Both the position numbers and the translations under genes were made by a program. Below are positions 1 through 53,185 of a DNA stretch of 64,000 nt, piece after piece. Numbering within the stretch: position 1 is the stretch's first letter; each line of letters starts with the position of its first letter. Below the pieces are notes generated by a model. That model ran no database searches and was not told the origin of the DNA. It saw only the letters and a list, made by a program, of their open reading frames with translations. Source of the DNA: Haplodiscus bocki (Eukaryota); contig OZ296654.1 in NCBI GenBank assembly GCA_965655095.1, forward strand, positions 94,054,001 through 94,118,000, given 5' to 3'.

Positions 1-931
1 ACTGATTCGTAGAGTTCTATCACAGTCAGTTCAGTTCGGCGATTCTTTTCGTTCCACACTGAAAATACGACCCAGTTTTCAGAATGGACTGCTTGTATAT
101 CCGAAATTCGTTTCATAGAAGTCGAAAAAATGATATCGCCATTTATGGAATCAATTAAGCTGAACTCGTAAAAATGTTTCGTTTCCTCGCTTGAAGAATC
201 AGGAATAACAGGGCTAACAACTAAGAAAACTATGTTGGGGTTCAGATATTTGAACAAAACTGTTCGGTCGCTTTGCACCTTGCCGGGAGAATCGACCAAT
301 TCGCCCTCTCTCTTGGCGTGAATTGATTGGATCTTGTGGGTAGGTCCAAAACTTTGTGTCCAGAGAGTTTCACCGGCACCACAGTCTTTGTATCTCAAGC
401 CGATAAGTTCAGAGACTGACTTCATTGCCATTACAATGAAAGGCTGATGTTGGAATCTTCTTCGAAATCGCTTTTTTACAAATTCAGATTTCGGGTAAAG
501 CGTTAACTCCATTTGAGAGTTAAGAATTCCAAAACTCTTGATTTCCTCCTCGTCGGCTAACTCAGGTATTGTAAAAACCTGTACAGCTTTGTACCCTTCG
601 TCTAAAATTAGTTCATAAACCTCGCCGCTTATTGGATTAAAATACACCAATGCCACATTTCCGTTCAACTTGTTTTGACCAATCACAACAGCGCGTGGTT
701 TGTATTTGTAATTGTCTGTTGTGCGCTGAACAAACAAGAACGAATTTGATTCGCCAGCTTGGGTAGCGAATGAAAAGTCTTTGAACCAATGAGACCACAC
801 TATTTTACCCGAATTGCTCAACATTCCGAGTAGCTTTCCGTTAGAGGTCAAAAGAATAACCATTTTATTGACATTGAACTTATCTCGAACTAATTCGCTG
901 TCTTCAGCACCACATTCAGTCAAGAAAGTAC
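1..931 (-). CDS. EMC1: ER membrane protein complex subunit 1, exon 2 (continues beyond window start)
   Basis: Frame read manually from acceptor cactcacag|GT at 932/931: LVRDKFNVNKMVILLTSNGKLLGM, LFVQRTT, SDRTVLFKYLNPN, HSENWVVFSVWNEKNRRTELTVIELYE, all matching EMC1 C-terminal motifs; phase 1 matches exon 1. Confidence 0.93.
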
Positions 932-935
932 CTGT

Positions 936-2991
936 GAGTGATGCGCATTTCTAGGAAAAATTTTTATCCAAATACTTAAAATGAATTTACTTCAAATGAT
1001 TCATTTTGATTTTTTGACAAAAAAAATCTGAAGGAAATCGAACAACGGACCTTTAGTATAACAATCAAGATATCAAAAGACTAGTCAACAATTTAAAAAA
1101 TTTCAGAAATGAGGATATTATTGCACTGTTTTTGAGATTCTACTGCCAACAGTTAACGCAAAACAAAAGGCGCAGAGGTACTGCAAAAAATTTTGACGTC
1201 AACGGTTCAAAGATAAAAATGCTGAAAAAAAGGCGCCCTAGGGGGCGAGGAGGCTCACTCTCCGCTCAGAAAGAAGATTATTGAACAGAACTGAAGCTTG
1301 AAAACCCTGTTCATAATAGTAACCGTGCGTTTGTATGATATATGATGCATTTGTAGCTAAAAAGATTATTTGGAGGGCAAAACAACAGAAATTTTATGAA
1401 AAGCGACCAGTTAGCTAACTTTAAAAGTTTGGCTAAATTGGGTTAAATACCATACTGGACAAAAAATTTCAGAAATCTAAAAAAAATCAAACATTGCTGT
1501 ATATTTATTACGTTGAATGCGTAGTCACTGAGTTGTTTTAGAAGGGAAAAGATCAAAATTTACCATAATATCGCGAAAACTGTTATTTTTGCCAAATCAA
1601 AGACACCATGACCTGCACTGGACGGTAAAAGAGTGAAAATTCCGGAGCCGTCATTCGTAGAACTGCAAAAACCTTCAAAGATTTAGGACTCCTCTGACCT
1701 AATCTGCTAGAAACGTTAGTTGAAATAGTTGTTCGAGAGTTGATGAAACAAAAGTGCGAAAAAACCGGAAAAGTTAAAAAATTAGCCAATTTTTGGGCTA
1801 TTTCGAAGTACCAAAATGACCAGCTTCTAAATAAAGTTTGCAGACTTGACAAACAAGTCTCACACTTTAAAATTTTCGCACAGATTGATGCTGGCTGTAT
1901 TGGTAACGAAGTGATTTGTGAGACAAATGGGCGAACATTCCGAAAAAACGCAAATACACTAGTTATTTTTTTTTACTGGAAAACAATGGACGTTTTTAAA
2001 ATCCGAAGCGGCGCACTTTCGTTCCAAACATGGGCTGGTCGCAAAATTTACGTATTTTCATACACCAACGAAACTTGCGGATTACCCACATACAACGTGA
2101 AAAAACTATTCGTTTACTAATTCCGTTAAAGGTTAAAGTTCCCAGTTAAGAAAATGAATTTCATTAGTGAAATTGAGTTCAATGGAGGCAAAAATTGCAA
2201 ATTTTACAACTTTTACACCACCAAAACGGTAAAATTGGCAAAAATTTATTGCTTACCGTTTTGAGACACTTTTCGGTTTGAAGAGCGGAAGTTACGCCGC
2301 GTATTTGATTAGCCGAGGGTTGAGTTTTCCAAAGTAGAATGTCGAAAATTATTGAATAGTCTTAAAACAACCAAAAAATGAAAAAAACGGTCTTTCTGCA
2401 CATTTACGTGGTACAAACTCTGTTAAAAACAACTGCAAAAACTTTGTATTTCTCAAAACTGATTTCTTCCGTGTCCAGAGAAACATTTTGGGCGATTTTT
2501 TTTCGAATATAGCAGGAAAGTTTTAGACTGATATCCCAACTTTTCAAACCGTCCACATTATTTCAACGATGCTTTTTTTGGTTACTACTACAACTATTTC
2601 TGCTAAGCTCATTAAGTAGTAGAGATAAATGTTCACGTTCAAACTAAGTGCAGCGATATACGAAAATCCAGAGTTCACGCGGAACTGACAAATTTACGGA
2701 TGAAAAAGTCCACAGACTGAATTCAATATTTTTCTTCTGTATGAAATTAGAACGAAAAATGAGAAACATGCTTTGGAAATCACAGCTTTTGAATGAAAAA
2801 TGCCTGAACACTTTCAATAAATCAAAAAAAGCTCACCTTTCAAGATTTCAAAGCTGCTAACGTGCTCTGCCAATTTGAAATTATGCTAAAATACTGTTCC
2901 GGTAGATGAAAAATTTCATAGATTCTTTTTGACAATTGTTGCTTCCTTTAAAATATAAAAACCCTCCAAAAACAAAAAAAGTGCATCACTC
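936..2991. mobile_element. hAT-type non-autonomous insertion that constitutes the EMC1 intron (intron 2995..932)
   Basis: Inverted repeats GAGTGATGC (936-944) / GCATCACTC (2983-2991), immediately flanked by identical 8-mers GTACCTGT at 928-935 and 2992-2999. Confidence 0.8.
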
Positions 2992-2995
2992 GTAC

Positions 2996-4433
2996 CTGTT
3001 GAGATTTTTTTATAGCTGTCAGTTACGAAATTGACAAATTGCGAAAAATGAGAAGAAATTCTGCGATAAAACATTTCTAGGATGGTGGTTTTTGCACGAC
3101 TCGCGAATTCAAAATCGGCTTCTAGAGTGATCATGGTTTCGCTTAAGTTTAAGTCACACATATCAACGTTGACTCCATAAGCTAAGGATTGATCTTTTTC
3201 CCACAAAACTGAAACTTCGCTTTCAGATGAAATTCCCAATAATGCCAAATTGTAGTCTTCAAAGGAAAACAAAACTCGTTCAAGTTTTCCGCTGTTTTTG
3301 CCGCTCACGGCAGCCACGGTGGTAACTTTTCCATGCTTCCGCAACTTTTGGGAGCCAATTATGTGTGTAAAAACTTTTTCAGCGGAATGGGTTTCAAAGG
3401 CTGTGATGGTACGTTCTGACGATTCGTCGCTGATAACACCGACTATCAGTCCTGATTTGGAGTTAGAAGTTAATATTTCGAAATGAGTCTCATAATTTGA
3501 GAACAAAGCGATATGTTCGAATTTGCCGTTCTCAATGATTCGTAGCAAAGAAGCGTGGGAATCAACATATTGAATCAGGTACATACCAGTTCCGATAAAC
3601 TTGACATCAGCAACAGCAAACTTCAGTTTGCTTTCATTTTCTTTTTCGGTTTCTGAGGATTTTCCACCGAACGCTGGAACAATACTCAGGGAATCTTCTT
3701 TCCAGCAGAATGCAAACATGCCTTCTAACTTACATTCAGAGGACGAACCCGTGATCGTCTTGATAAATTCCTCCGATTTTTCCCCAGTAGCAGCATCTAA
3801 CGTCAACACGATAACTTTGTCAGAATGTAGGGTAACCACTGCAACATTACCTTGCGAAACACCAATAGAACCTTGCAGAACATCGCTTTTCTGAGGAAGC
3901 ACGATTTTCCTCATCAAGTAAGGTTCCTCTGTTTTCAGTGAGTATGACCAAGCAGCGTTTTCATCATTTGTGAAGCATGCAATTTCTGATCTAGTAGCAA
4001 CGAAAAGACCAATGTTGGGTTTTGAAATAACACCATAATCGTCGATTGCTGAGTTGAAACTTGCTGTTTCTTGAAAGGGAATTTCCTCTCTTAGACTTCC
4101 TGAAGTTTTGTCAAACACCCGAAGAAGTCTCCTTTTCTCGTGTACAACATAGATATCTCCGTTGTCGGCTAACTCAACCCGGGATATTTCTCCATCAACA
4201 TCTCCAAAGACTTTTCTCCAAATAATTTTGCCTAATTTAGGCTCCACAAGTGCCAAAACATTCTCGGATGCAACCAATGCTCGTGACTGGCTGTTTACTG
4301 TGATGAACCTCGACCAAGTGACGCAACCGAAGTTTTCGATCAGCCAATCAAATTTGCCGACTTGGTCTTCGAACAAACTGAGAGCAGTCGGAGGGCAGCA
4401 GCATAGCAGAGATAGCAAGCAATACAATTTCAT
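2996..4433 (-). CDS. EMC1: ER membrane protein complex subunit 1, exon 1
   Basis: Within ORF 2916..4466; second Met (4433) gives signal peptide MKLYCLLSLLCCCPPTALS followed by the EMC1 hallmark LFEDQVGKFDW and GKIIWRKV; donor ACAG|gtacgag at 2996/2995 (1438 nt, phase 1). Confidence 0.93.
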
Positions 4434-5289
4434 TGCTTCCTGAAAATATTGAACTACCAAAAACATCTCAAAACTTGCGTTCAGCGAACATGAAGAATTA
4501 AGTTATTTCCACTACTATTTATGGAAAGACATTAAAAACGACTGAAAAAACCTATTCGAAAGCTCCACAGCAAAACCAAAAATATAATTCTTTTATGGCC
4601 AGCTTTTCATTTGTTTGACGCCAAAAAGTTTCAAAAAACCGCGATGAAAGTCAATTAGTGAACCAATAAATATTCAAAACTTAGCAGCGAACTACTAGGA
4701 AAAAGTTTTTCTCTGAAACGATTAATTTGAGACTTCAATTTATTTTGTACCTCAACCCCAAATCGCAAGGCGTCAAAAAAGAAAATATTCTCATTTTGTT
4801 CATTCGCACCAAAATCTTTAGAATTCTAAGTAATTCTTCTCTAAACGTCAAGATTTATGAAAACAATTTTAAAATTTGAAGCATAAATTTTCAACTAAAA
4901 CTGTCTACTATGTATATGGCGCCGCTTGTTTCTTCATTCCATAACCCATACAATATTCACATACAATCCTTTACTTTTTGGACTGCCAAGTCTATCAAAA
5001 AATCATGCATGGATTGAATTCCAATCTTATACAGATATTTTTTTGTGTCTCCGCAATATGCAAAAAGAATTCTATGTTTTCGAGCTCATTACAGAGAGAA
5101 CAAAGCGGGTGGGGTTTTGGACCGTTGTTCTACATCACATAATCGAATCTTCGTCTCTGCAACAAGTGTAAACAAACTTGAAAAAATTGCTTTCATGAAA
5201 AGGCGTCAATTTGTTTCCACAGCCAGCTCAGGGAAGTGTGACTCGTCAGCTCCATATATACTTCTTGATTTTCCTATCGTTCAGCCCCG

Positions 5290-9062: not shown

Positions 9063-10268
9063 CTATAGGACATTTTTGCTGCCAATTCCATTCAGAATGG
9101 GTCTCAGCTCGTTTTGCGTCGCTTCGGTTACAGCAATGACGGCACATTTGTTCACACCCACGAAGGTTCCCAGTTGTTTTGTGTCACCTGCTACCAAATA
9201 AGGAACCCCTTGTTGACCACACATCTTCGGAAATACCTGGATAACTTCAATAGGCTGCAAGTCCCCGGCTATCACGACAAGTTTGGGTTCTTTATTTTGT
9301 ATACTTTTGGCTACATCGTGGATGCCACATTTGAGTCCCTTGGGTAGGCCTTTGTCATCGCCCTGGGTTGTCTTATACGTCTTCAAAAGAGAGAACACTT
9401 TGGTTGATATCGATTGATTGGCTTTCTTCAAGTCGTTTCTCTTCGAGTCTTCCATGTTGATATTAAATTGATCTCCGAGTTGCCGGGCAACAATTTCCCA
9501 TCTTTTTGCAAACTTCTTATTCTTCCATACCCGCTTACCCTTTCCTACTTTAGAATCATTTGAGGCCATTAGTTGGTTTCTCAATTTTTTTCTCTGGTTT
9601 CTGCGCTTGCGCTTGAAGTTGTCTTCATTTTTCATCAGTATTTTGGAATCCTCGGCATTTCCTGGCATTTCCGCCGGTGTTTTCGTATCCTCGATATTAT
9701 CTTGTTTTTCGGTGGCTTTCTTGGTTTTATTTGCATTCTGTTTCTTCATGGGCGTTTTGGAACTCTGGAGATTTTCTGGCTTTTGCGCTGGTGTTTTAGA
9801 ATCTTTAGAATCTTCTTGCTTAGCCGCAGATTTCTTGGGATCTTCAGTCATTTTCTGCTTTTTATAAAATGCTTCGGAGCCCTTGAAGTTTTTGGGCCTT
9901 TTCGCCGGTGTTTTGGTATTATTCACATTATCTTGTTCTTCAACGTGTTTATTGTTTTCATCGGCATTCTTTTTCTTCAAAGGCGTTTTCGAATCCATGG
10001 CGTTTTTCCCAGGGTTCAATATTTCAGCATCGTCGGTCAGTTTTTGTTTCTTCTTAGGGGTTGTGATATCAATGACATTTTCCTTATGTTCTGTCGAAGA
10101 TAGCGCTCTCGAGCCAGCTTCGATGGTTTTGACTGCACTTTCACAACTCTCCACCGTTTTGGTAGCTTTAGATTTCCGCTTGGCGACCACTCCAGTTTTC
10201 TTTACGGGGTCAGCTTTGGCAGCAGTCTCAGCCAAAACTTCAGGTCCTTTCGTGCAACGGGTTCTCAT
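9063..10268 (-). CDS. Intronless 401-aa protein: long Lys-rich low-complexity N-terminus plus C-terminal L7Ae/L30e/S12e/Gadd45 RNA-binding domain (NHP2/RPL7A-like)
   Basis: C-terminus CGIHDVAKSIQNKEPKLVVIAGDLQPIEVIQVFPKMCGQQGVPYLV...LGTFVGVNKCAVIAV fits the L7Ae family pattern; uninterrupted ORF. Confidence 0.85.
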   Translation of the reverse strand: MRTRCTKGPEVLAETAAKADPVKKTGVVAKRKSKATKTVESCESAVKTIEAGSRALSSTEHKENVIDITTPKKKQKLTDDAEILNPGKNAMDSKTPLKKKNADENNKHVEEQDNVNNTKTPAKRPKNFKGSEAFYKKQKMTEDPKKSAAKQEDSKDSKTPAQKPENLQSSKTPMKKQNANKTKKATEKQDNIEDTKTPAEMPGNAEDSKILMKNEDNFKRKRRNQRKKLRNQLMASNDSKVGKGKRVWKNKKFAKRWEIVARQLGDQFNINMEDSKRNDLKKANQSISTKVFSLLKTYKTTQGDDKGLPKGLKCGIHDVAKSIQNKEPKLVVIAGDLQPIEVIQVFPKMCGQQGVPYLVAGDTKQLGTFVGVNKCAVIAVTEATQNELRPILNGIGSKNVL

Positions 10269-11299: not shown

Positions 11300-14200
11300 A
11301 AGCATGATTTATAAAGTGTCCAGTAATTTCTATTACTTGATATTCTTTTCCGAGGAGAACTCAAAAGGGATCCAAATCCAATACCATCTAAGAGCACGGA
11401 AATGAAACGAAGCTGAAACAAATCAACTGAATTACTTAGAAATTGAATGAAGTTTTCAAACCACTCGTAGCTTCAACGATCAACGAACTTCAACGACCCT
11501 ATGAAACTCTATGCGCATGGCTGTGAAAACATCTGTTCAGGGATGGCACAGCCTCATTTTCATTTATTTTTCAAACCAAAACTTCCGTTGGAGCTGAAAG
11601 GTATTTCGAAAAAACTCAATAATAACAAAAATAACCGAAAAGAAAATCGGACTCTTTAACGATAACGTTAGGCTATGCCGTGTCACGCATCCCGGTAAAT
11701 CTTCAAAGATGGCAATACCAAACTCTTCCAACACCCATCAAATTTACGGCAATAGGCTGAGAAGGATACTGAAATGAAATCTCAGGCGACTCTCGATTAG
11801 GTATTTCAGTACAGTGTGATGGTTGTTCCACCGCGAATGCTACTCACCATCCAATAACACAGAAGGCTGAGAAAAGGTTGCTGATTTTTTTTTTTGGGGG
11901 GGGGGGGGGTGGGGGGGTTTGCTTACGGCAGCTACAACAGTCTGATGCAGTTGTCAAAGATCCTGTCTTGGGTGGTTTCGGGAAAAGGGAAGCTTCACAT
12001 CAGAACACCTTAAAAGTAGATTGGGCTTGCTCCAATGCGATATGCCAATGTTTTCAATGTGTTCAAACACAATGATTACACCTTCTAAAACCAAATTTGG
12101 ACTACCATTTGAAATTGTTTACCTCGACTAAAATACACAGCTACTATGAAACACTGTGATTTGAAACATTATGCGACAAAATTGATTTTTCTCGTATTGT
12201 CTGTATGATAGGAATGATAAAAAATAAATCAATCAAATATTTGAAACATTCCATTTTTCTCACGATGCTTTTGGTTTTATGAGAAGTAATTCTAACGTCT
12301 GACCACGTAAGGTATTCAAATATTTCATGCACCAAAAACCTTACGGGCCGATTAAATCGCAAAACATAAACAGTGCAGCAAGTCACGTAGGCTGTTCAAA
12401 AAAGCCGATGGAGCTTGAATCGGCCGAAATTCAACGCCTCCAAAATTCATTGCATCGATAAACAGAAGAGTAAAATCAGTCAAAATTGGACCAACATCAA
12501 TGACAGGTAGTCGCTTCAATGTCCAATTCCCTGACTCGATCAAAATCAAACACATTACTTTCGCCGAACAGAAAACTCTCCATTCGAAAAGCACTTATGC
12601 TGTCTCGAGAAGACTACATGCAACAACGTTTTTATAATTTGACGCTACACTGTGTAACCATTTCTGCAGTGGTTTGGTTAAAAAATTGTGCAACTAAGCT
12701 GAGCCTCGAAACTATCAATCTGGATAACTAGCGTTACTTTCACAGTGCATTGGATATATCATTCCTGTTCTGAAATCAAGAGCGAATCAATTTTCCGAAT
12801 CTCGTTATTTCGTTTGAATTGTGGACCCGGGTCTTGTGGCAAAACATATTTAGCCGCTCAACTACTTAGAACAATCTTCTCAAACCGACGTTTGCTTAAG
12901 TTTTGTGGAACTATGAGCAATTTTCGTCTCATTACAATCCTTTCTATTAGAATGCACACGCGAAATTGCATCGATTTTCATCAACAATTTCAATGGAACG
13001 CAGATAAATGACATCAATGTGGAAACGCTAGAGATTATTGGCGATACGTAACAAGGTGCTTGTAAAGATGGAATTATTCTCAACTTAGTTGTTCCTGGCA
13101 GAACTGAATGGACGTCTATAGCTTTACGAGTTGGATAAAAATTTGAAAAACATCGCTCTCAACGTAACGCAAAAGATTTTTTCAAAAGTCCTCGTGAGTT
13201 GACCAAACTGAGGTGTTGCTCAGACACCTATGTGATAGAAAATTTGTTGAAGGAGTTTCAAAAAGCTCCACAAAAATCGTTTGGTAATGTAATAAATGTT
13301 TTGAACCCTCGGACAGATCCAATATTGAAGTATTGCTCCGTCTGTAGTGGCTAACCGCTGTTTCAGGAATGTTTTTGACAAATGGTATTGCCCAAAACTC
13401 GATATAGTTTTGACAGCTAACAAAGCTTTAGTAAAAATACAGCTGAGTCGTTCAATGCATTATAATTATGGAATTTGACACCCGCTTCCGGTTTTATTGG
13501 TATTCGGAAGTGGTTAAGATTAGTTTATTAAAACTGGTATTAATGTGTTTTTGTCTCTCAGCACGCTGCCAGATCTAATTTGTGTTCGCCTTCGTGAATC
13601 TAGTTGTTATTGAGCTGCAAAAGAAGTTTATTTGGTCAATCTGTTGCAAAACTTTCATGATTGTACAACAGCTAGAAAGGAGGAAAACTGTCAAAATAGC
13701 ACTAACTCCCCCCACCCCCACTAAAAAATACTGACTTCACTTTGTATACGACGTGTCATGTTGTTCATCAAGTGAAGCTAGCCTCCAGAATTGACACGGA
13801 CCAATGATATCTGTCGCCCAGCCAGAGAACCGCACGACGACAAGTAAACAACTTGGTGTTTTACCATCTCTATATTCTTAAATGTAGTAACATTCCTAAA
13901 TGAGAACACCAAAAATTAAACAAATGAACAAAGTGGGAATTAGCCCAAACAATGCCAAAGAATTTTTCACTTCTATTCACAAAACATTCATAGTACCTGC
14001 CTAATGACACAACGTTTCTGCTAACCCTGATTTCAGAAGCACTTCTGCAGATAGAACAGTTAAGACCCTCAGTGGAGTGATCCAAAAACTTTCTAAGAAT
14101 TCAAGAAAGCAAAAAAATTGTGATACTTCCTTGCAATATTCATTTTAAAACGCACAAAGAAGAAAACAGTCGCAATCAACAGTGAGCAGCCGCTGAAACT

Positions 14201-14450
14201 TTTGAGAGCAAAAACAACAGAAATTTTATGGTATCCCCACGTGAGCTAATTTGGAAGGAAGCATATGGCACGGTTCGCATATCGAAGCATTTGAAAACGA
14301 AAAGAACTTCCTGTGAAAAAAATCGATCAGAGTAGACGTTATCTCCAAAGTTTGTTAAATTTGGAGAAAAGTGAGAAAAATACACGACTGTACCGCTTTC
14401 GAATGAAATTGTACCATAACAGCTGCTTTGAATAACCTAACACCAGACAC
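11300..14450. mobile_element. Highly decayed Maverick/Polinton-like relic (may extend to ~18 kb)
   Basis: Plus-strand packaging-ATPase-like remnants GPGSCGKTYL (~12822) and IALNVTQ..FKSPRE (~13150-13200); weaker minus-strand capsid-like (VEFRPIQAPS, YLIDL) and PolB-like (FGDNVYSD) remnants. Confidence 0.45.
11885..11917 (+). repeat. T11-G14-T-G7 homopolymer tract
   Basis: Directly visible. Confidence 0.9.
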
Positions 14451-17400
14451 ACCCGATAAGATGCAAAATTGCCTACTTTTGGTAGATTTCGATGCAATCA
14501 AAAACCCTCAATTTTGAAAAATTTACAGATATCTGCTAACAAGGCTAAAAAGTAATTTGTATCGATAAGATATAGATTAGTAGCTAAAAAGTTGAATTAG
14601 ATGGCAAAAACACAAAAATTCGGATTAATCGGGAAAATACCAATTCACGACTAAAACTAACGCACGAAAAACAATATTTTCTGATGAAAATATCAAAATT
14701 ACCAAGAGGATTTCAAAATTTATCCAAATCTATAGAATCATTTTCTAATTGTAGCTATAAAAGGATTTGATAGTGAAAGAATTTCGTGAATTCACAAAAA
14801 AACGAATTCCTTGAAAGGATTCCGTTTCTGACAAGAATGTTCACGGAAAGTGTAGTTCTGTTGAGTTGCGCAACTTGACTGGTAGTCAGGAGTGCGATGC
14901 ATTTAGTCCGCATAGGTGAGTTGAAGAAAACATCACAGGGTGAAATTTCTAAGGCAGGACAAGGGACATTTTTGTACGATTGCAGCAAAAACTTTCATTT
15001 ATCATACAAATTGTGATTGCCCTTAATTACGGTTCGTATCAAGTTTCCATTGATTGAATAAATCTTTCGAACAAACCATTGGTTCGCGGACAAAAAGTTG
15101 GACCGTATTTGAATCGTGATTTCTAGTTGCTAACAAAACGTTTGAACTCCGGATTCACGAATGCAGGTATTTCGTCACATCTTATCAATTCCAGAAAGTC
15201 AGAACAACTTGTTAGGAATTGTTAACGTCGGAAGCCGAAGCACTTGTTAAGGAAAAAACTGCATCCAATTTGGAGAATTTGTCAAAAGCAACAAATAGGT
15301 ACTCGGAAGTTGAAAACGCTTTGTTTTAGGTACCATTAAGGTCTATAGTGAACGGTAGGAAAAGTTTTGAGGCAGTTGTACCTTTTTTGATAAGGTGCTT
15401 CTCTCACTAGCTGTTGCCTTGTCCGTCTGAGACCACGGAGAGCAAATTTTCTTTTCATTGACTTGGAGATCACCGTAATGGTTTCATTCCAACACCTGTA
15501 ATTTCAACTGTAGACGAGTCGCAAGTAACTGGTATCTGCTAGAGGCTATACAACTCTAAGGCTTAGGCGTTGCCAAGCATTCATTTTAAATATTCGAAAA
15601 TTTTTGTAAGTTTTTTATTCCATTTGCATTGGACGTTTTTATGCAATAGGTAAAGATTGGTTGTCGTAAGGTACTTTCATTTCATTTAGGGCTAAGACGT
15701 AACTTTTAAGAACGGAGATTTCATTTAAACCAAGTTGAAGATCTAGCTATTCAATCTTGGTATTAGAGAAATGACGTTTGTCAAAGTTGGCAACGAATCC
15801 AGTCAATAAAACACGTTTTAAAACAGCATGTAGACGAGCATGTTCTTGTGGAACCGTACACAATTATGCCGTCACGAAAACTAAAGCAACCGGCAAGACC
15901 ATCTAGGACTACATCAATCGTTTTTGAAATTTATTGGGAACGTCTACAAACCAAAAGTTGCTCGTTTGAATTGCGATGGATTGAGTTGCTCAGTATTGAG
16001 AGAAAGTGAATTGATTTGTCAGCATGGACTCAAAAACAAACGAGAGTAACTAGTATTTCTTCCCCCACCAACCCCGCTGAGAATATTATTTGCCCCCTAT
16101 AGCTGACGCTCAGCTGAGCAGTATGTTTCAAGTTGCTGTTTTTCAAGAAAAGTTATGGAACTGCATGTAACGTTAATTTGTTTTTCACTAGCTTCAATAA
16201 GCAATCAGCTTCTTGGAATCTATCGAGATTTGTGAATTGCTTGCATTGTCTTTTACCTCGCAAAAGATGAATTCAGTGAATACATTGGTAGTGGTAGCTA
16301 CAGCTTCGACTGAGGGGATAATCCCCTGGGGGACAACGGAAAAGAGCCGAATGACCTTCTCATCCGGAAGCTCCCGTGAAGAAGCTTCTTTTTAATCACA
16401 CCCATCACCTAAATCTACCGAAAATTGCGAAGGCACTGAAATATCCGCACACAGAAGGCTAGAGCTACTGGTCTCGTAGTTTGCTTTTCTTTAAGCGCGC
16501 ATAACATATTGCCATCATTTTCCAGTAGAAAACCCGGTACTCGCAGTGTTTGACCTTAATCTATGGAAAAAATAGAAACATCACAAAGAGATGTGAGAAG
16601 CATTCATCAAACACTATCATCAACTTCACAATATGAAGATCCCATTGCCTCTCAGTGCTAAATATGCAAAACTTGAAGCATTCCCGTCTAGAAGGGGAAA
16701 AGGTCGATAAAATAATAATTTCACAAAAATGCCGAGTTAAATAGTTTATTTTTTGCTCCGAAAAGCCCATTTAGCGATTAGGTAGATATAAAAGGCCCAA
16801 TAAAATTGACTTCTGCGGGGAAACAAAATAACTCCCGGAGAGGTCATTTGTTCAATTTGGCAACCTCACAACCTACCTACTTCTGGGCGCAAATTAAATC
16901 TGCAGCAAATTCAGAAATGTCGGAGATGCAGCGAAAGTGATCTAAAGACACGGAAAAGTTGAATATTATCGATTTGTGTTTAGCTGCAAACAAATGCAGC
17001 CCAAAACTATTTGGCGGGGCACAAAATTTAATACACTCAAAACGAGAGACAAAGGTCACTCCAGCGCCCAGATAGCTTTTGTACAACACTGAGGGAAGGC
17101 TGCGCTTCTCAACACTTGCGCCTACCTTGGTTTAAACACTAAGCAGCATAATTCAACAGCTGGTTCCAATCTAACTGGTACAGCCTAAGTTTACAGGCAC
17201 CACGCTAGTTGGGGGAGAAATACCGATAAAACAAGCACAACTTAGTCAATTCTTGAACATTTGTATTCGAAATGAAATTTCACTTTTCAGGGAGTCAATA
17301 GTTCCGTTGATAGAAAATGTTACATCGGTGAGTCGGGGGAGGCACAGGTTCGCATCTCAGAAAATGTGAAAAAACTATGATTCATAAACACTTGCGACAA

Positions 17401-39199: not shown

Positions 39200-40450
39200 A
39201 CAGTACAACCATAACCAGCAGTTGATAACAAAAAAACTAGTTAAAAGAAAGTGCAATTCAGCCGGAGAATAGCAAAGTATCTTGAGCTTTAATAACAGAA
39301 AAACAGTTGAAATGGGTTTTTCTCACAGCTTTTTCAATCTGTAAATTGAAAAACAGTCGATCATCCAGCATAAAACCTAACAGCCTCATTTGTTTAGCTT
39401 GTGCAAGGGATACGTACTGTGCTGGATAGTGCGAAATCTTTGATCGTTTCGACTAAACAACAATTTTGTCCGATTTGCTATGATTAAAAAATGTTTCGTT
39501 CCAATAATATCCTCGAGTACTAGGATTGGATTATCATAGATTGAACCATTTTCAACCTTTCCGGCTAAATATGGGGTATGGTCATCAGGGAACCCATAAA
39601 AATTAGCTTCTTTCGGTGTAGGGTTTCGTAACTTGGACATCGTAAAATTGGAGAAATAAGCTACAGGAACGGACCCTTGAGGAGCACCAAGATTGATCGG
39701 TGATACGCCTGATACTTGATTTTTGTAGAAGACTGACTGAGTACGTTTGAATAAAAAAGATATGAAGAATCGCAAAAACATAGGCACTAAGGTGCACGCT
39801 ACAACGCTGACGACATGCTTAAGCAATGCCAGAGAGCAAGTAGCAAAATCCAGAAAGGTTAGGCAGAGAACAAGCATGAGATAACAGCGGAGGTTCGAGG
39901 AGACTAATCCAACTTCAAACAAAATGAAGCTTCAGAAGAAAACTCTGCCAACTCGAAAGTCAGCGACAGCCAGCCCGTGTTTGGAAAATTCTCTCACAGA
40001 GCACTAAGGTTCCAAAAGTTGACAACTAGGAGTTATGTAAAGATATACGGAGCCCGAAACAAAAAAGCTTCCTAAAAAGCCGTTTTTCTAGAGAAATATT
40101 CTCAGAAAACTCGACTGAAGATTTTTTGCGCAACCCCGAGCCCACATGGGCACTCAAATGCTGAGGAAAAAAAAGAGACAGGCAGTTCAGGCAATTTTCC
40201 AGGTGACGAGAGTCGTAGTAAATTAACGAAAGGGGCAAAAACAATTGAAAAAATGTTCTACATCTAAAGAGTACATTGGCCCGACCACATATCTACAACC
40301 AAGCTGACCCTGAACTGCTCTCAACTGCTTTTCCAGGCAATTCAGCGGGCATCACGAAGCCCAGTTCACTTTCATTGTTTGTGCAACCGGATTAAAATGT
40401 TTCCGGAAGAGTTGGCAAAGGTTGAGGAAACCTATTTATTGAGTACTTTC
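39200..40450 (-). mobile_element. Decayed CR1/L2/jockey-type LINE reverse transcriptase fragment
   Basis: ORF 39386..39922 contains LGAPQGSV and FYGFPDDH (degenerate GVPQGSVLGP and FADD). Confidence 0.7.
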
Positions 40451-43400
40451 GGCAAAAAATCCAAGAGAAAATTTCGCTCACAGTCGAAACTTGCGCCAAA
40501 TCTCACTGATGTACACATTGCTTAATTTTTTCCCCAATTCAATTGATATGCATCACTTTGGGGAATGCTGAATGCGCTGAACGTTAGAAATGGAAAAACT
40601 TAATTGAAAATTGATTTTTTGCAGAACAAAGTTCCGTTAAAATATTGTGAAAAACTATTGGCTAAAGACTGAATGGAACCAACGCTTCATATTCCATCGC
40701 CAAACCGTTATCGGGATTCCATACGGGGGATATTACGCCAGAGAAGTGCGACAAAGTACACTTGCCCTCTGAAAAAATCAGGGTTTTCAATTATTTTCGC
40801 CAATAACTCGCCGGCGAAAAAGTCTCGGCCACCCAAAATTTCAGCCCCGTCAATTACGACATTGCCAGTGTAGCTCAGCAATAAGTCAACGGATCCTACA
40901 AATGCGTTTGTAGAAAATGAACGTCAGTGCCAAGAAACGCAGTGGGCAATGGGGAATGTCGAAAAGTTCAAAAATTTCAGCTTTTTTTTGACGGAAACTG
41001 GCCGAAAAAAAATGTTGGCAAGAAATATCAGAACACGCATTTCCAAGCTTCCTGTAGAGACAAGACTCAAAAATATACCTTTTGCCCTCCAAGAAATCCG
41101 AAAATTGAAATTTTCATCGTTAACAACTCGCCGGAAAAAATTCGGCGGCCAAAAATTGGAATACGATAGATTGTGAGCCCGTCGTAATGTTTTTACAAAA
41201 TTTGGGTAAATCTGACCAATAGGTGCCGAGAAGATTACATTCGAAGAGATGAAAATCAGAGGGAAGTCAAGGACGGAAAAAAATGAAAACACTTTGACGT
41301 GTCCTTGTGTGAATAGGCTTCACTCCGTTCGCCTAACAAAAGGAGTTAGTGAAGGTTGCAGTTCCTACAAAGCACTGATGATGACCCAACGCGGAAGCTT
41401 GTCAAACGCTTTCGATACGTCTGAGAAAACTTTGATATAGTAATGATCGATATTTTGAACTTCGACAAAAAAGTTGTCAGCAAAAACGCGCCATTGAAAT
41501 ACATGATTTTTTTCTCAATCCAAACTGAGTTGGTAACAAGACGGCCGGCTACCACCCGCATTATTTGCGCCTTTCGAATTTGGTTAAAATATGATTTTGA
41601 AACATGAAAACGTTTTTACCTCGGAAAATAACATTTTTCCATCATATTTTCTAATTTTCAATAACGTTCAAAGTTGCCAAAGAAACCACATATTGAGGGC
41701 TGAAAACACATTTTAAAGAAATATTACTATATTATACATATTCCACAGCAAAGTTACTACCTTTGGCGATTTTCAAAAAATTCAAGACTTTTTTTTCGAA
41801 AAACCCATCTATTTTTCAAAAAAACCTCAAATTTTCAACCTTTCGAGAAATTTTACTACTTTACTGTCATTCTATGGAAAATTTGCAACAATGTGATGAA
41901 AAAAATGACATTCAAACACGTGAACAACAGATGTTGGCTCGTCCACGCGAGCTCAATTGGCAAATACCGAGAAAAAAAACGCACCCATTTGAGAGGAAGA
42001 TTTTGTTTTCCATATTTTCAATATGGCCCAAAATATTAAATTTGTTGAATAAATTGGGAGTAGATACTTCTTGCTAAAGACTAATCTCTCAAATAACCTC
42101 AATACAACTGGAGTAATAGAGACAGGTCCTAAATTAAATACATTACTAGGGTCCTACCCTTCGGGTATTGGAATAACTCGGGTAAAGCACGTTTGAACAA
42201 TTCTGTAAAGAAGCCAAGCTCTAAATAGCTATGGGTTCTGATAAAAACATTGCATTTTCTTTGAATATAGTAATTCGTCCCATCTAGGAGCCGATGATTT
42301 CATACGAATAAATTCGTAAACTACAATAACACTAAATAAAGGTTGGTTATATCTCAAAAGACTCGGAAACTGATGATGTCATCCAAGTTGTCAGTTATAG
42401 ACATCACAAAGGTTTTGTTCAACCAAAATGTGGGAGATCAGTCTCCAGATATGAATCATCTATGATACATAACTTACTTTGATTCCACCGCCGTTTGCTT
42501 CCTGTTTTGTTGTTTCTACTAATGGCTGATTTGGCAATCAAAGTCTTGATGGTGCTTTCATACTCTTTAGCCTTTTCTATTCTTCCATGTTTCTAAAGTT
42601 TATTCTTTTAGGATGGGCAAGTTTTCTTGTGGCGTCATATCTGGTGGATCTGTACTAGTGATGACAAAGACTTTTCTTGGACAAAATGTGTCAAAACAGA
42701 AGTAAGCCCATAAATTAATCAAGTTCAGAAAACTGAATCAAAAAATTTCTCCTATGTTTCTTTGGATAAAGAACGTGATATCATGTCTATTCGTGATTTT
42801 CGCTGATCTCAGATTTTAACTTTCTGTTTCTGAATTCAGTTGGCAGGAAAGTAAAATTGTTTGATGATCTGAAGGAGCGGAGGGCTTCAGGCCTTCAGCG
42901 TCAGACTCTATCAACATTTGAAGCTAATACGTTATCCAGCACCTTATTGCCTCTACGAGAAGGTTTTCGTAGGCTTGTCACGTTTGTATATAGAAAGATG
43001 TTTTCAAGGGAATAATCATTCAAGCCTCCAAGTAACAAAAATTTGTAAGAAGGATAGACATCAGTGAGTGTCTATCATTTAATCTATCAACTCACTGCAG
43101 CAGCTATCGCTCGGATGATAATATACTGAGCGTAAGATCAGACGAATATCAGTAAAACCCAAAATAAACCATAAAATTTCAGCTACAGGAATGTCCAATA
43201 TTTTGAAAGTAACATTTTTTTGAATAGAAAGAAAGACTACAACCATGAGTTTTCGTGGAATTACAACAATTTCTGTCATGTCTAAAAATACTATAGCCAG
43301 ATAATGCAAGTTGATCATAGTGAACAATTTCATTTAACCAGCTTTCAACAATGCATGTAACACAACTTTACGTGAGGGCATCTGCAGCAATAAGTTCAAA

Positions 43401-44996
43401 AGAGTTGCGCTTGTTGAGAAAGCTACTATTTAAAAGCATAAAAATCAAAGTGTTGATATCTAGTCACAAACTCACTAGAACCTCTTTGTGAAAAAACGGA
43501 AACTTCGCTCGATATTAGATTCTTCTTTTGGTATTCCGCTCTCTAGCATATGCAAATGTTTCTTCAAAACCTTTTCCATTTCAAGTTCCCTTGCTGTAAG
43601 TTGAAGGGCTATACTGATCTTTTCATCAGCAAAATCTTCGAGCTTAATAACATTGCAAATAATTCGTTTTGCCACATACGTAGTAGTGTATCGTAACACG
43701 AATTTTTGTCAAATCTGAAGATATCACTAACACTATTCATAACATCTTGATTTAGAAAATAAAAAACGTTAGATACACATAGGTAGATCGATCAATCAAT
43801 CCCATCGATTTTTTTGTCGGTTTCCGATACGTTTGAAATGCGGATCTGAATAATAAAGGGAGGAATCGTATGAACATTCCCTCTCACGTTGTTGCTGCTA
43901 TGTTGGCGGATTGTCTACTTTCGCTAGTGCTGGTTTCAAAGAATAAACCTGTTTTGTATTTAGCATTTCATTTTGAGAGAATTAACAGCTTCTAAGGCAC
44001 AGAGTTTCCTTCCGCAAATTTTATTTGAGATGAAACTCCTTCGAAAACACACACATTGTTGTCTTTCTTTTTTTGGTTTTATTGAGACATTTACTCAATT
44101 CTTTGTCTGAGGCTTCAGGTAATTGTCCCACAGTCGAGCAATAGCTAGAATCGACAGAATCCAGACGGAATCTCTCCGCCTATCCTCCTGCTTGGGAGCC
44201 ACCACGCCTGCTCCCTCCACCATTCCTATATGAAAAAAAACTATTTATAGGTTTATCACAAAAAGCAGAATTCAGTCCATGCAATGGGCCAGAGTGCGAG
44301 TATCAGATTTTGTTCTTTCCGCTTGCATTCGTACCCAGTTTTGCTAATCATTCCTTCTTGGTGTTCTTTTCGGACCGCACCGCGGCCGCTAACAAACAAC
44401 GCAGCTGATAAGATCAGGCGGCGGCTGAGTAAATAGGTCACAACGGTCCGCTCGTCTAATATTCTCTTTATTATTTTCAGACGCACGCTCTGGAGAAAAA
44501 AAAATTCTCTACACTCCTTCAAATTTTTCTAAGCCTATAGCTTCCCGAGAACTGTAGCCTCAAAAACGCCGATTTTTGCTCAGGAGTTCACTTGAAAATC
44601 CTTACTGCAGTCTTCAACACTTATTACATAAATATACTTCACCAAGGGCTTGGCTCTTGGAACGAACACTGCCGAAGCTATTTCTGTACATCAACTCTAA
44701 TGTTAAACATGTTTAGCAATTCACTTGGTCTTTGCTAACAAAGTGTTTGATTTTCAAATTAACACTTTTTATTTTTGGATGAACACTAAGTTGAAAATCC
44801 ATGAAATCTATCAAGTCTGGCAGTTCAATTTTCGGAACATTTAGGGGTCAACGACTTATTTTGGAATTTCTTCGACTCCACAGGTTCCAGATGCCTTGGA
44901 TATCTCTGCAAAGAATGAAGCACAATTCTTTAGGAGTCTTTTAAATCAAACTTGCAGAAATTTTGATATATTTTTCAACGAAATATTTGGTTGTCT

Positions 44997-46419
44997 CAGG
45001 TTGGCCACATTTAATTCGAAGAAAAAGGGACCTTGCGAAGCCTCATAAAAAGGGACCAATAAGGGACCTGAAATTAACCCGTAAATAGAAAAACGGACGT
45101 TTAAGGGACCCTCTTTTATACTTGAATTGTAAGAGGCACTACTAGAAAAAAAATAAATGTTAACTTAAGAACTGAATTTTCAGAATTCTATTTAAGCGCA
45201 AGAGATTGTGACCAGTAACTTTGGTCCATTTAAACAGAATACATTATAACAGACATTATAACAGAGGCCTTGGGCACTCAGAGAAACCAGGTCGATGGTG
45301 CGTCGCGTTCTTTCATTAACATCGCTTTGCGGCTTCCAAGGTCAGATACCAGCTTCCGAGCTTGCTCAAGCTCATTGTTGGTCGCTGTGATATCCCGCTG
45401 AACCGTCAGTGTTGACTTTGTTTGACACCATCATATGTTTCTGTGGTCATATTGCTTCGGTAACTTGTCTCAGTTGTCTTCATCAGTGAAAATGCGGATT
45501 CGACAATCATGTTGTGAGTAGAAACTAGTAGGCAGGACGATATGAGCTTGGTCACAACGGGGAATGATTCAAGAAACGCCAGCATAGACTCATATAGAGA
45601 AAGAAACCGAACCGAAGTATACACGGGATAGTTAACGACGTCGAGAAAGTCGGAGCACTGTTTCATTATCGATTATCTTGGGACACTGTTGTTCCATCAG
45701 TGCCCGAAATCCTGACTTCCGACCAAGCATTACATTGCAATTATCTGTCATAAGATACACTAAATTAGATAAATCCAGATTGTGCTGCTGAAGGGCTGCC
45801 ACGGTCGCATTAAAGACGGCGGTCTCACTGTCCACCAACTTAATATCATCAATGGACTTTACAGAACTGCTAGATTTGATAAAACAGTGGTGGCTCTGGC
45901 ATTTGCTATCTCGATTGTAACTTGATTCCCTAAAAAATATTGCATTATTGAACGCAAAGGTCTATTTATTGTATTTTAATATTCACCTGAGTGTACTGCT
46001 TCAGAAGTAACATGGACGACGTAGGTTTGATGTTGCTCGAGAGATCCACATCCCTTCTTAACAGACAGAATCCTGCCGTCATATCTGCATTTGACATGAT
46101 GTTCGTCACCCGGTATCCTCACTGCCCATCGGAATTTCGACAGAAGCGTCTCAGTAACCTTACATACACCCATCTGAAAAACAAATGTTTCAGACCTGTT
46201 TCAAATAGGTCTGAAACATTTGAAAATAGGCTATTTGGCAACAATATACAAGAAATTCCGCAGTTGATGTTTAGGTATACAAAAAAGTTATTATCAAGCT
46301 AATACACATTAATGATCTGTTCTAAATGTGCCTAAATTGATCAACCCTAGGTCCCTTAAAAAGGGACTTTTGAATGTTAAGGGACCAGGTCCCTTAAAAA
46401 AGACCAAGTGGCCACCCTG
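44997..46419 (-). mobile_element. Internally deleted hAT DNA transposon (1423 bp) with TIRs and 8-bp TSD
   Basis: TIRs CAGGTTGGCCAC / GTGGCCACCCTG; TSD GGTTGTCT at 44989-44996 and 46420-46427; subterminal AGGGACC/GGTCCCT repeats; transposase pieces: BED-like finger (45976-46173), LMTDNCNVMLGRKSG (45632-45838), hAT dimerisation-like FPVVTKLISSCLLVSTHNMIVESAFSLMK (45406-45666). Confidence 0.92.
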
Positions 46420-51198: not shown

Positions 51199-51597
51199 CT
51201 GATCAGTGATGACGATAATCATGAAAAGCAAGGATAACTTGTAAATCCAGAAGAGGCAATTTTGAAGTCAACTTTTTTTTGCAAAACTTCAGTTGGCACT
51301 TCATGCCTACACAAACAAAAATGGTTCGGACAAACAAATTTTGTGCAAAAATTCTGTCTTAGGAACACTATTTTCATTCGTTAGAAACTTGAACTTGTGA
51401 GTTGCCAAATACTGTCAAACCGAAAGGTATCAAGTGTTGAGTTCAGATGAAGCGAAAAAGTCAATGATTTTGAAAACATAGAGACCACAAGTGATAGTCT
51501 TTGAAACGTGGGCAAAATTCCAAAAGCAACAGACAGTTAAGTTTAAGTCACTCATCTGGTAATCTTTGAAAAATGACCATCACTGAAGTTTACCCAC

Positions 51598-51859
51598 CCA
51601 GCTTGATTTCTTCCAGCCCGGGCACAATATCGAACAGTTTGTACAGCTGTTCATTGGTGAGAGAAGAGTCGTATCTCACGACCAAGTCTCTGTGAGGAAG
51701 ACCCAAAATGGTGGATGCCATCATATTCTGTTCCCATGTTAATTTCCCACAGACTGATGGGTTTTCCGGGAATACAGGAGTACACCCGGCACTAACAGAA
51801 CTACTCTGGGGAGAGGGTTTCCCGCCGAAAGTTGCGAGTTTGGCTGAAGATGCTGTACA
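51598..51859 (-). CDS. RBM45: RBM45-like internal exon (first half of RRM3)
   Basis: Manual translation RDLVVRYDSSLTNEQLYKLFDIVPGLEEIKL (RBM45 FDIVPGLE motif); donor G|gtgggt at 51598/51597; acceptor at 51859 or 51852. Confidence 0.8.
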
Positions 51860-52923
51860 CTTTTTTAGTGATGTCCATTTAACTTCACGTAATATTGATC
51901 AATCATTTTGTGGTTAAAAAAAGAGTCGTAATGAAACAAAAAATACATTATTTACCCAAAGGTCAACGATCTTAGTTCAAAAATAGGACACTCTTGGAAA
52001 GTTCGGAGTCAAGCATTGAAGAAAATTTACGCTTCCAGACAATGTGCCAGAAATAAACTTTCGAATTTTAACGTATTTCCAATTGTCACTAACAGTTTTC
52101 AAATTATTATTCATTGGCTCATGGACGTTTTGAATACCTAATCTTCTCACTCCGTAAGATATGCTATCAAGGTTGCACGAGAGAATCTAAATGAAAAATT
52201 TCATGGCAAAAAGTTCTTGTCTGGCGTTGCTTGAACATAGAACATGACTAAAAATGGCAATTCACATTTTTGAGACTAAACTGAATCATTCAAGTTTGAA
52301 AATTGTTGCATCTTTCAAAAAATTTAAAGAACCACTTGAACTACCCACTAAATGACTCTATTGTTGTAAATCTTTGTAGTTAATGAACATGCAAATCATA
52401 GTAATGTAGAACTTTCTCGTTAAAACAATTAATTGTCTAGCTTTGAGATCGACAGGTTTCAAGTTCGATCACTCCTATCGCCATGGCTTTTTTACGTTTC
52501 AGTTAACTCTCTTTGCCACGGTAAGCAATGCAAACTTTGCAACAAACCACAAATGGCCATTCGAGTGTTCATTAACACAGGCCCGTGTAACTCCGTGATA
52601 ATTTCCGCCTTCCAAATTGCGGAAGAAAGGTTAAAATGCCTTAATTCGAACTAAAAATGTGCAAGCTTGCATCCAAAATCTTTTTTTTTGCAGAAAAGCC
52701 TAAATTTAGACAATAAAAACTATTTTTTTTGAGAAAGACGACAGCTAGACGCATTCTACGGGAAATTTGGAAAAAAATGGAGAAAATTTTTTGCGTGCAC
52801 TTTTGCTTCATCGTGCAATTGGCAAAGCTGGTGTAAAGAATCTGAATGTTGAACAAATGATTTTCCTTCCAAATATGAAACATTGGGCTGAAAATAATAA
52901 ACTAAAAAAGGGACATCACTTTC

Positions 52924-53185
52924 CTTAACGGTATAATCACTAGCCGGACAGGTAGCAGCGATAACCGGGTGGAACCTGGCTACAGTGTTTGTTTCGACAG
53001 CCTTCGCAGCGGAAGAGGGTTTTTCGAACTTGATGATAGCGCTGCCACTCGGCTCCAAAGTGGCGCTGTTCCTCACTATGTTCACAAACTCTATCGTCCC
53101 GAACTCAGAGAAGTGTGCATTGAGAGAGTCTTCCGTATCCGTGGGTTGCACCGAAATGCGTAGCTTTTTCAGTTTATCCAGATAC
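52924..53185 (-). CDS. RBM45: RBM45-like internal exon (RRM2); 3' boundary ambiguous (52930, 52924 or 52920)
   Basis: LRISVQPTDTEDSLNAHFSEFGTIEFVNIVRNSATLEPSGSAIIKFEKPSSAAKAVE; acceptor ggcag|GTAT at 53186/53185. Confidence 0.8.

What the first reader, a model, noticed from the sequence alone, without database searches (positions are those of the whole stretch)
928..2999. EMC1 intron is exactly TSD-TIR...TIR-TSD, with both splice sites supplied by the 8-bp target-site duplication
Seen (minus strand): ACAG|GTAC-[GAGTGATGC...GCATCACTC]-ACAG|GTAC. The left copy gives the GT donor, the right copy gives the AG acceptor, and splicing leaves one ACAGGTAC with the frame intact (ISTG-TFL). Known: insertion into an AGGT proto-splice site is a proposed route to precise intron gain, and an 8-bp TSD is typical of hAT elements. 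Inference: an unusually clean example of such a gain in a conserved gene.
Basis: partly seen in the sequence, partly recalled or inferred. Interest (0 to 1): 0.88.

Follow-up and report, generated by a model that had tools for sequence, protein, structure and literature searches.

The report
Transposon insertion became EMC1's only intron
In an acoel-like worm genome, the single intron of the conserved ER gene EMC1 is just a 2-kb cut-and-paste transposon plus its 8-base insertion scar, whose two copies supply both splice signals; this is a clean animal example of a known but rarely caught way of making introns, though splicing itself has not been seen.

Summary
On the minus strand, EMC1 has a 490-codon exon (4466-2996), a 2064-bp intron (2995-932) and an exon of about 416 codons. 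The intron is exactly a 2056-bp non-coding element (2991-936) plus one copy of an 8-bp duplication, ACAGGTAC. The element's terminal inverted repeats are 9/9 perfect and 13/15 when extended.

The GT from the upstream copy and the AG from the downstream copy form the only GT-AG pair that gives a 906-aa protein colinear with orthologues. Three related genomes lack an intron at this site:
- Two Symsagittifera-like EMC1 genes have no introns at all.
- The closest relative (67% aa) reads straight through the site and has at least four introns elsewhere.
- In sea urchin the homologous site lies mid-exon.

So this is a lineage-specific gain by transposon insertion into an AGGT proto-splice site. That mechanism is already described for introners, but I found no report of it in acoels.

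Caveats:
- No RNA data exist, so splicing is inferred.
- No second full copy of the element was found, so hAT membership and introner-family status are unproven.
- Two introns of an RRM gene in the same window carry similar AGTGATG...CATCACT ends but no clean duplication.

Unchecked notes from this scan report similar transposon-shaped introns elsewhere in this genome (DHPS, LEO1).

The parts
2996..4466 (-). EMC1 exon 1 (490 codons plus the first base of the Gly codon). It has no introns and contains the EMC1 N-terminal beta-propeller.
   Evidence: ORF; Pfam PF25293, E 2.9e-22; 67% identical to the relative's exon 1, P0002.
2992..2999 (-). Upstream copy of the 8-bp target-site duplication ACAG|GTAC. 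Its GT (2995-2994) is the predicted 5' splice site (CAG|GTACGA).
   Evidence: The donor matches 7 of 9 positions of the CAG|GTAAGT consensus; the +5 G is the first base of the TIR.
932..2995 (-). The only intron of this EMC1 gene, 2064 bp = the element (2056 bp) plus one TSD copy (8 bp), phase 1.
   Evidence: the only GT-AG pair colinear with orthologues; alignment without a gap at the junction.
936..2991 (.). Non-autonomous DNA-transposon-like element, 2056 bp. It has no long ORF, no Pfam or Rfam match, and contains short segments repeated elsewhere in the genome.
   Evidence: In one search, extra contig depth at 1149-1469 and about tenfold at 2433-2539 shows repeated internal segments. One search finds weak similarity to 14200-14620.
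2977..2991 (-). TIR at the 5' end of the intron: GAGTGATGCACTTTT.
   Evidence: (I20).
936..950 (+). TIR at the 3' end of the intron: GAGTGATGCGCATTT on the + strand (minus strand ...AAATGCGCATCACTC).
   Evidence: (I20).
928..935 (-). Downstream copy of the duplication ACAG|GTAC. Its AG (933-932) is the predicted 3' splice site.
1..931 (-). EMC1 exon 2, open to the window edge. On the source contig it continues to the stop (L003 13536-14785) and contains the EMC1_C domain.
51853..52929 (-). Putative intron 1 of an RRM-domain gene; its exact ends are not settled. It carries AGTGATGTCCCTTT ... AAATGGACATCACT (14/15 TIR) 8-14 nt inside the candidate splice sites, with no matching 8-bp duplication.
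   Evidence: end pairing -17.1 kcal/mol, 0 of 500 shuffles; RRM_1.
51199..51597 (-). Putative intron 2 of the same RRM gene: GTGGGTAAACTT-CAGTGATG ... CATCACTG-ATCAG. Only a 5-nt repeat (GGTGG) spans both junctions.
   Evidence: -14.9 kcal/mol, 29 of 500 shuffles.

Best explanation
A short-TIR cut-and-paste DNA transposon inserted into the coding sequence of an EMC1 gene that had no introns. It was non-autonomous and made an 8-bp target-site duplication, so it is hAT-like. The target octamer ACAGGTAC contains the proto-splice site AG|GT. After duplication, the upstream copy offers CAG|GTAC (plus a G at +5 from the first TIR base) as a 5' splice site. The downstream copy offers ACAG| as a 3' splice site. 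Removing everything between them takes out the element plus exactly one copy of the octamer. The mRNA is therefore restored to its pre-insertion sequence and frame (..KKISTGTFLTEC..). The insertion could thus be tolerated in an essential gene and persist as its only intron. Shown here: the anatomy, the absence of the intron in related genomes, colinearity of the predicted product, and intact constrained exons on both sides. Inferred: that the spliceosome uses these sites, that the element is a hAT relative, and that the predicted pairing of the two ends helps bring the sites together.
For: The TSD-TIR...TIR-TSD structure fills the intron to the base. The gene has exactly one intron, and the spliced CDS gives 906 aa with one terminal stop. 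Among in-frame GT-AG pairs near the ends, only 2995/932 gives a product without an indel against orthologues. There is no intron at this site in the closest relative L001, in two intronless Symsagittifera-like genes (L002, L005) or in sea urchin. Coding sequence on both sides is under strong constraint against the relative: dN/dS is 0.09 upstream, and downstream dN is 0.14 with saturated dS. The insertion is present, with no empty-site contig or loose end at either junction, in DNA contigs of four runs from two samples. No second EMC1 copy and no other EMC1 ORF from this genome was found. Related termini (AGTGATGNNCWTTT) give 7 hits in the window against 1.38 expected, with 0 of 100 shuffles reaching 7, and they sit at the ends of two further introns. 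The mechanism itself is documented: some introner families take both splice sites from the insertion site or TSD (PMC9860276, read).
Against: There is no RNA evidence: no RNA run holds the stretch, and no transcript-derived protein spans the junction. No second full copy of the element was seen at 90% identity or more in the contigs of four runs, in the rest of the window or in the relative, so mobility of this particular sequence is inferred from its ends alone. The acceptor has a weak pyrimidine tract and a competing upstream TAG 19 nt before it. An alternative donor, CGA|GTGATG inside the TIR, is also in frame and adds 2 aa. In the predicted minimum-energy fold, the 5' GUAC is paired with the GUAC at the start of exon 2, which could hinder splicing as easily as help it. 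The first TIR base is G, not the C/T usual for hAT (my own knowledge of hAT termini).
Confidence: 0.72

Rival explanations
1. The transposon insertion is real but is not removed precisely. Either this is a disrupted or poorly functional EMC1 allele, or splicing uses other sites, for example the donor GTGATG inside the TIR, which gives a 2-aa insertion.
For: There are no RNA data. The alternative in-frame donor and several other in-frame GT-AG pairs exist. The pyrimidine tract is weak and an upstream TAG competes. If the insertion were very recent, intact ORFs would not prove function.
Against: Both samples carry the insertion with no empty-site contig. No other EMC1 copy was found. The TSD donor matches the consensus better than the TIR donor (7/9 against 5/9, read). 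Only the TSD pair restores colinearity. The imperfect TIRs and the absence of near-identical copies argue against a very recent insertion.
Confidence: 0.17
2. The intron was gained by repair of a staggered double-strand break that captured filler DNA. This is the model proposed for Daphnia's new introns, which are flanked by short direct repeats. No transposase was involved.
For: An 8-bp direct repeat containing AGGT at both junctions is what that model also predicts. No other full copy of the insert was found.
Against: The insert ends in a 9/9 (13/15) inverted repeat that abuts the direct repeats on both sides. Repair filler does not predict this. Similar termini recur at other intron ends in the window.
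Confidence: 0.06
3. This is an old intron, homologous to the relative's intron 12 nt downstream and shifted by intron sliding. The TIR and direct repeat are then chance.
For: The relative L001 has a phase-1 intron only 12 nt downstream. Its donor also reads ACAG|GTAC.
Against: Given an intron, a 9-bp TIR plus an 8-bp repeat exactly at both ends has a probability of roughly 1e-9 (my estimate from base odds; one search gives the genome-wide background). The two introns share no sequence similarity. The intronless orthologues and sea urchin show that neither position is ancestral. The relative's intron ends show no TIR.
Confidence: 0.03

Closest known systems
Introner families that take both splice sites from the insertion site or TSD (e.g. 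Florenciella sp. family 2; Gozashti et al. 2022, PMC9860276, Fig. 2E)
   Same: A DNA-transposon insertion creates a spliceosomal intron. The element carries neither splice site. Excision at the RNA level restores the original mRNA length.
   Different: Those are short, multi-copy, near-identical families in protists, defined by many copies. Here there is one 2-kb element in a bilaterian, with no near-identical sibling found and an 8-bp duplication.
Micromonas and Aureococcus introner elements (Huff, Zilberman and Roy 2016; cited from my own knowledge and as summarised in PMC9860276)
   Same: Non-autonomous TIR/TSD elements whose duplication is co-opted as a splice site, giving precise intron gain.
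   Different: Those elements carry one splice site themselves and co-opt only the other. They have different TSD lengths, are far more numerous, and are algal.
hAT-superfamily non-autonomous elements (MITE-like)
   Same: 8-bp target-site duplication, short TIRs with an (N)AGTG start resembling the hAT YARNG terminus, and no coding capacity.
   Different: The first TIR base is G. No hAT transposase partner with these TIRs was found, and no other copies with independent duplications. Other superfamilies (P, Mutator-like, Merlin) can also make 8-bp duplications.
Maize Ds, dSpm and Mu insertions spliced out of exons (Wessler and others; my own knowledge)
   Same: A DNA transposon sitting in an exon behaves as an intron.
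   Different: Those use cryptic sites inside the element ends, and splicing is usually imprecise and leaky. Here the duplication allows exact restoration of the mRNA.
New Daphnia introns flanked by short direct repeats (Li et al. 2009; my own knowledge)
   Same: Lineage-specific introns with AGGT-containing direct repeats at both junctions.
   Different: Those are attributed to break repair and have no terminal inverted repeats.

Membership tests
U2-type spliceosomal intron | GT...AG boundaries with usable flanking consensus | tested here: met
   CAG|GTACGA ... CACAG|GT. The donor matches 7 of 9 consensus positions.
U2-type spliceosomal intron | Removal restores an open frame colinear with orthologues | tested here: met
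   906-aa product with one terminal stop. There is no gap at the junction against four orthologues. It is the only colinear GT-AG pair.
U2-type spliceosomal intron | Spliced junction observed in RNA | not testable with these tools
   No RNA run holds the stretch. The runs laid are DNA contigs. No junction-spanning protein is on record.
hAT superfamily (non-autonomous member) | 8-bp target-site duplication directly flanking the TIRs | tested here: met
   ACAGGTAC at 2999-2992 and 935-928, abutting the TIRs.
hAT superfamily (non-autonomous member) | Short TIRs with the 5'-YARNG terminus | tested here: inconclusive
   The TIR starts GAGTG, so the first base is G rather than C/T. A related terminus in the window starts CAGTG. 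Another begins AGTGATG with unpaired outer bases, T on one arm and A on the other. The YARNG rule is from my own knowledge.
hAT superfamily (non-autonomous member) | Autonomous partner encoding a hAT transposase with the same TIRs | not testable with these tools
   No whole-genome search was possible. None is present in the window. The element's ORFs have no Pfam match.
hAT superfamily (non-autonomous member) | Other copies in the genome with different duplications (proof of mobility) | tested here: inconclusive
   No full copy at 90% or more in the contigs of four runs or in the window. Only TIR-level resemblance at two other introns, without clean duplications.
Introner (family of transposon-derived introns) | Many sequence-similar introns in unrelated genes of one genome | tested here: inconclusive
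   Within 64 kb, three introns in two genes share AGTGATGNNCWTTT-type ends, but their interiors are unrelated. A genome-wide census was not possible. Other scan notes (unchecked) report similar introns elsewhere in this genome.
Introner (family of transposon-derived introns) | Intron absent at that position in related lineages (recent gain) | tested here: met
   Absent in L001, L002, L005 and sea urchin.
Introner (family of transposon-derived introns) | Splice sites supplied by the element and/or its TSD so that the mRNA is restored | tested here: met
   At sequence level, both sites lie in the two TSD copies, and intron length equals the element plus 8 bp.

The most novel reading that the evidence does not exclude
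The EMC1 element is one member of a family of hAT-like miniature transposons (termini AGTGATGNNCWTTT). On this reading the family has repeatedly seeded new introns in intron-poor genes of this acoel lineage, an introner-like burst in a bilaterian animal, and the pairing of its ends holds the two splice sites together and helps splicing. The sister species would then show a parallel burst from a different repeat family in the same gene.
Probability: 0.3. Interest if true: 0.75.

Novelty: new member of a known kind. Interest (0 to 1): 0.6.

Why it matters
How new spliceosomal introns arise is a long-standing question. Transposon-made introns are now well documented in algae, fungi and protists, but they are rare in animals: Gozashti et al. 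2022 found introners in only two animal groups. Clean single-event examples, where the pre-insertion state can be read off related genomes, are scarce.

Here an essential, conserved gene had lost all of its roughly 20 ancestral introns. It has since regained exactly one, and every base of that intron is explained by a single transposition into an AGGT site.

The case also shows that no specialised element is needed. Any transposon that makes an 8-bp duplication will create a precisely removable intron whenever the duplicated octamer contains AGGT, which is about 2% of random sites.

The draft genome paper for the acoel Praesagittifera naikaiensis states that no intron made only of transposon sequence was found (PMC6451197). 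This locus is therefore a counter-example in the group, and a handle for a genome-wide survey.

Tried and rejected
- RNA evidence. The look-up of sequencing runs found no RNA run. The four holders are DNA contigs from one study, so the junction could not be tested.
- Empty-site allele. No contig or loose end at either junction in two samples.
- Other copies of the element. None at 90% or more in those contigs. blastn against the rest of the window gave only two short internal hits at 14.2-14.6 kb, and nothing in the relative's locus.
- Coding or RNA function of the element. No Pfam, Rfam or tandem-repeat signal.
- A junction-spanning or full-length protein from this species, or a second EMC1 copy. 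Only the exon-1 ORF itself and the relative's ORF were found, even with a 528-aa query that admits proteins up to 924 aa.
- More loci of this genome through multi-copy ORFs. All window ORFs on record are single-copy.
- A clean 8-bp duplication at the two RRM-gene introns. Not found in any register. Their exact splice sites could not be fixed without orthologues or RNA.
- The pair 42657-46956. It shares only the 7-mer and has no clear flanking exons, so I set it aside as probably chance.
- TIRs at the ends of the relative's four introns. None found.
- Intron sliding from the relative's intron 12 nt away. Rejected (see rival explanations).
- Tandem duplication of an AGGT-containing exon segment. 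Rejected because the intron interior has no similarity to the exons.
Full report
**Observation**

Read on the minus strand, the sequence is ...AAA ATC TCA ACA G|GTAC-GAGTGATGCACTTTT...(2 kb)...AAATGCGCATCACTC-ACAG|GT ACT TTC TTG....
- The octamer ACAGGTAC lies at 2999-2992 and again at 935-928.
- Directly inside the two copies lie inverted repeats, perfect for 9 bases and 13/15 when extended (pair I20).
- GAGTGATGC occurs nowhere else in the 64 kb.
- My own scan for a 9-bp TIR flanked by an 8-bp direct repeat finds only this site in the window.

First-order Markov simulations give about one such structure per ten 64-kb windows by chance (6 hits in 60). The structure alone is therefore weak evidence. 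What counts is that it coincides, to the base, with both ends of an intron defined independently.

**The gene**

- The upstream ORF (4466-2997, 490 codons) carries the EMC1 N-terminal propeller.
- The downstream frame is open for 309 codons to the window edge and begins the EMC1_C domain.
- The source contig (L003, ENA ERZ26859043) shows that exon 2 runs on to a stop.
- Joining 2996 to 931 gives a 906-aa protein with a single terminal stop. This EMC1 therefore has exactly one intron, of 2064 bp = a 2056-bp element + 8 bp.
- I enumerated every in-frame GT-AG pair near the two ends. Only this pair is colinear with orthologues.
- The nearest alternative uses GTGATG inside the TIR as donor and would add two residues.

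**Is it a gain?**

| Comparison | Identity to window EMC1 | State at the window's intron site |
|---|---|---|
| Closest relative found (L001, ENA ERZ25074608) | 67% aa; dS saturated | Uninterrupted: ..ATT TCC AAA GGA ACT TTC.. |
| P0004 (its 90% cluster contains Symsagittifera roscoffensis XP_063718541.1) | 39% aa | Gene is a single uninterrupted ORF |
| P0160 (65% identical to P0004) | not measured | Gene is a single uninterrupted ORF |
| Sea urchin (about 20 introns) | 26% aa | Homologous residue lies mid-exon; nearest intron 12-13 codons away |

- These matches place the window's organism among or near the acoels.
- The relative L001 has at least four introns of its own, at other places. 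The first lies only 12 nt downstream of the window's site.
- At least three of the relative's four introns also fall at positions that sea urchin does not share.
- The simplest history is this. EMC1 lost its ancestral introns before these acoels diverged. The window's lineage then gained one intron, and the sister lineage gained several others.
- Both halves of the window's gene are under strong protein-level constraint.

**Mechanism**

- The target octamer contains AG|GT. After duplication, the upstream copy gives CAG|GTAC, and the first TIR base supplies the +5 G. The downstream copy gives ACAG|.
- Splicing between them removes the element plus one octamer, so the mRNA returns to its pre-insertion sequence whatever the register or frame. 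Any 8-bp-duplicating transposon landing on an AGGT-containing octamer would behave this way.
- The element itself has no ORF of note and no Pfam, Rfam or tandem-repeat match. It is non-autonomous.
- The two ends are predicted to pair: -19.0 kcal/mol, with 0 of 500 shuffles as stable. The stem appears in the minimum-energy fold of the whole intron, extended by GUAC-GUAC pairing of the two TSD halves. Whether this helps or hinders splicing is unknown.

**What is not shown**

- There is no RNA run for this organism. The four runs that hold the stretch are DNA contigs from two samples of one study.
- Those contigs carry the insertion with no empty-site contig. They contain no second full copy at 90% or more, only short internal repeats.
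- No junction-spanning protein and no second EMC1 copy is on record.
- The hAT label rests on the 8-bp duplication and an (N)AGTG terminus. The first base here is G, and no transposase partner was found.

**Family context**

- The motif AGTGATGNNCWTTT occurs 7 times in the window against 1.38 expected, and 0 of 100 shuffles reach 7.
- Apart from the EMC1 ends, three of the hits lie at the ends of two introns of an RRM-domain gene (51.2-52.9 kb, minus strand), 5-14 nt inside the candidate splice sites. The matching partner terminus of the second intron shares only the CAGTGATG core.
- One of these introns has a 14/15 TIR and strongly pairing ends. Neither has a clean 8-bp duplication, and their exact splice sites could not be fixed.
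- A fourth intron end in that gene lacks the motif.
- This is suggestive of a TIR family associated with introns, but it is not proof.
- Unchecked notes from this scan report similar transposon-shaped introns elsewhere in the same genome: s1-359258, s1-356307, s1-356459, s1-366646 and s1-361972.

**Comparison with what is known**

- Transposon-made introns whose splice sites come from the duplication or the insertion site are described for introners. These include families that carry neither splice site (PMC9860276; PMC12130899).
- In that survey animals were nearly devoid of them, with only two groups. A full-text search for "introner" plus "acoel" returned one paper, on Copia retrotransposons. 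The 2025 survey does not mention acoels.
- The Praesagittifera naikaiensis genome paper states that no intron composed only of transposon sequence was found (PMC6451197).
- S. roscoffensis is reported to have few introns (3.2 per gene) that are long (2.5 kb on average), at 36.7% GC (PMC9911081). This matches the window.

**Verdict**

The mechanism is a known kind. This is a new and unusually clean member, in an animal group where I found no report of it. Splicing and family membership still need to be demonstrated.

Noticed in passing
L001:11406-12478 and L001:13952-14958 (also L001:16382-16556): In the sister species, two EMC1 introns share a repeat of about 530 bp (about 81% identity, same orientation), and probably a third intron does too. 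In intron 3 the repeat starts 6 nt after the donor. This suggests the sister lineage's new introns also came from a mobile element, of a different family.
   Followed up: partly
L001:11402-11409: The relative's intron lies 12 nt downstream of the window's site, and its donor reads the same octamer ACAG|GTAC as the window's target-site duplication, although the codons are not homologous. It may be coincidence (about 1/256 for the four free bases) or a shared insertion preference. Unexplained.
   Followed up: partly
window 51199-51597 and 51853-52929 (minus strand): Two introns of an RRM-domain gene carry AGTGATG...CATCACT inverted ends like the EMC1 element, but no clean 8-bp duplication. The TIR itself contains a possible donor, A|GTGATG.
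   Followed up: partly
window 2450-2493 and 1237-1387: Short segments inside the element are multi-copy in the genome: contig depth is about tenfold at 2433-2539 and 2- to 4-fold at 1149-1469. The 2-kb element may therefore be composite or carry nested repeat fragments.
   Followed up: no
window 2992-2995 with 928-931: The GTAC half of the duplication is a palindrome. In the predicted fold of the pre-mRNA, the 5' splice-site GUAC therefore pairs with the GUAC that starts exon 2, extending the TIR stem.
   Followed up: partly
window 55741-56106 and 39386-39922 (minus strand): Reverse-transcriptase fragments (Pfam RVT_1), showing retroelement debris between the few host genes. Only three clear host genes (EMC1, an L7Ae-domain protein and an RRM protein) were recognised in the 64 kb.
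   Followed up: no
window 9063-10268 (minus strand) and L001:8464-9042: The L7Ae-domain gene next to EMC1 is syntenic in the relative. It is one 401-codon ORF here but is split into at least two called ORFs there, which may be another intron presence/absence difference.
   Followed up: no
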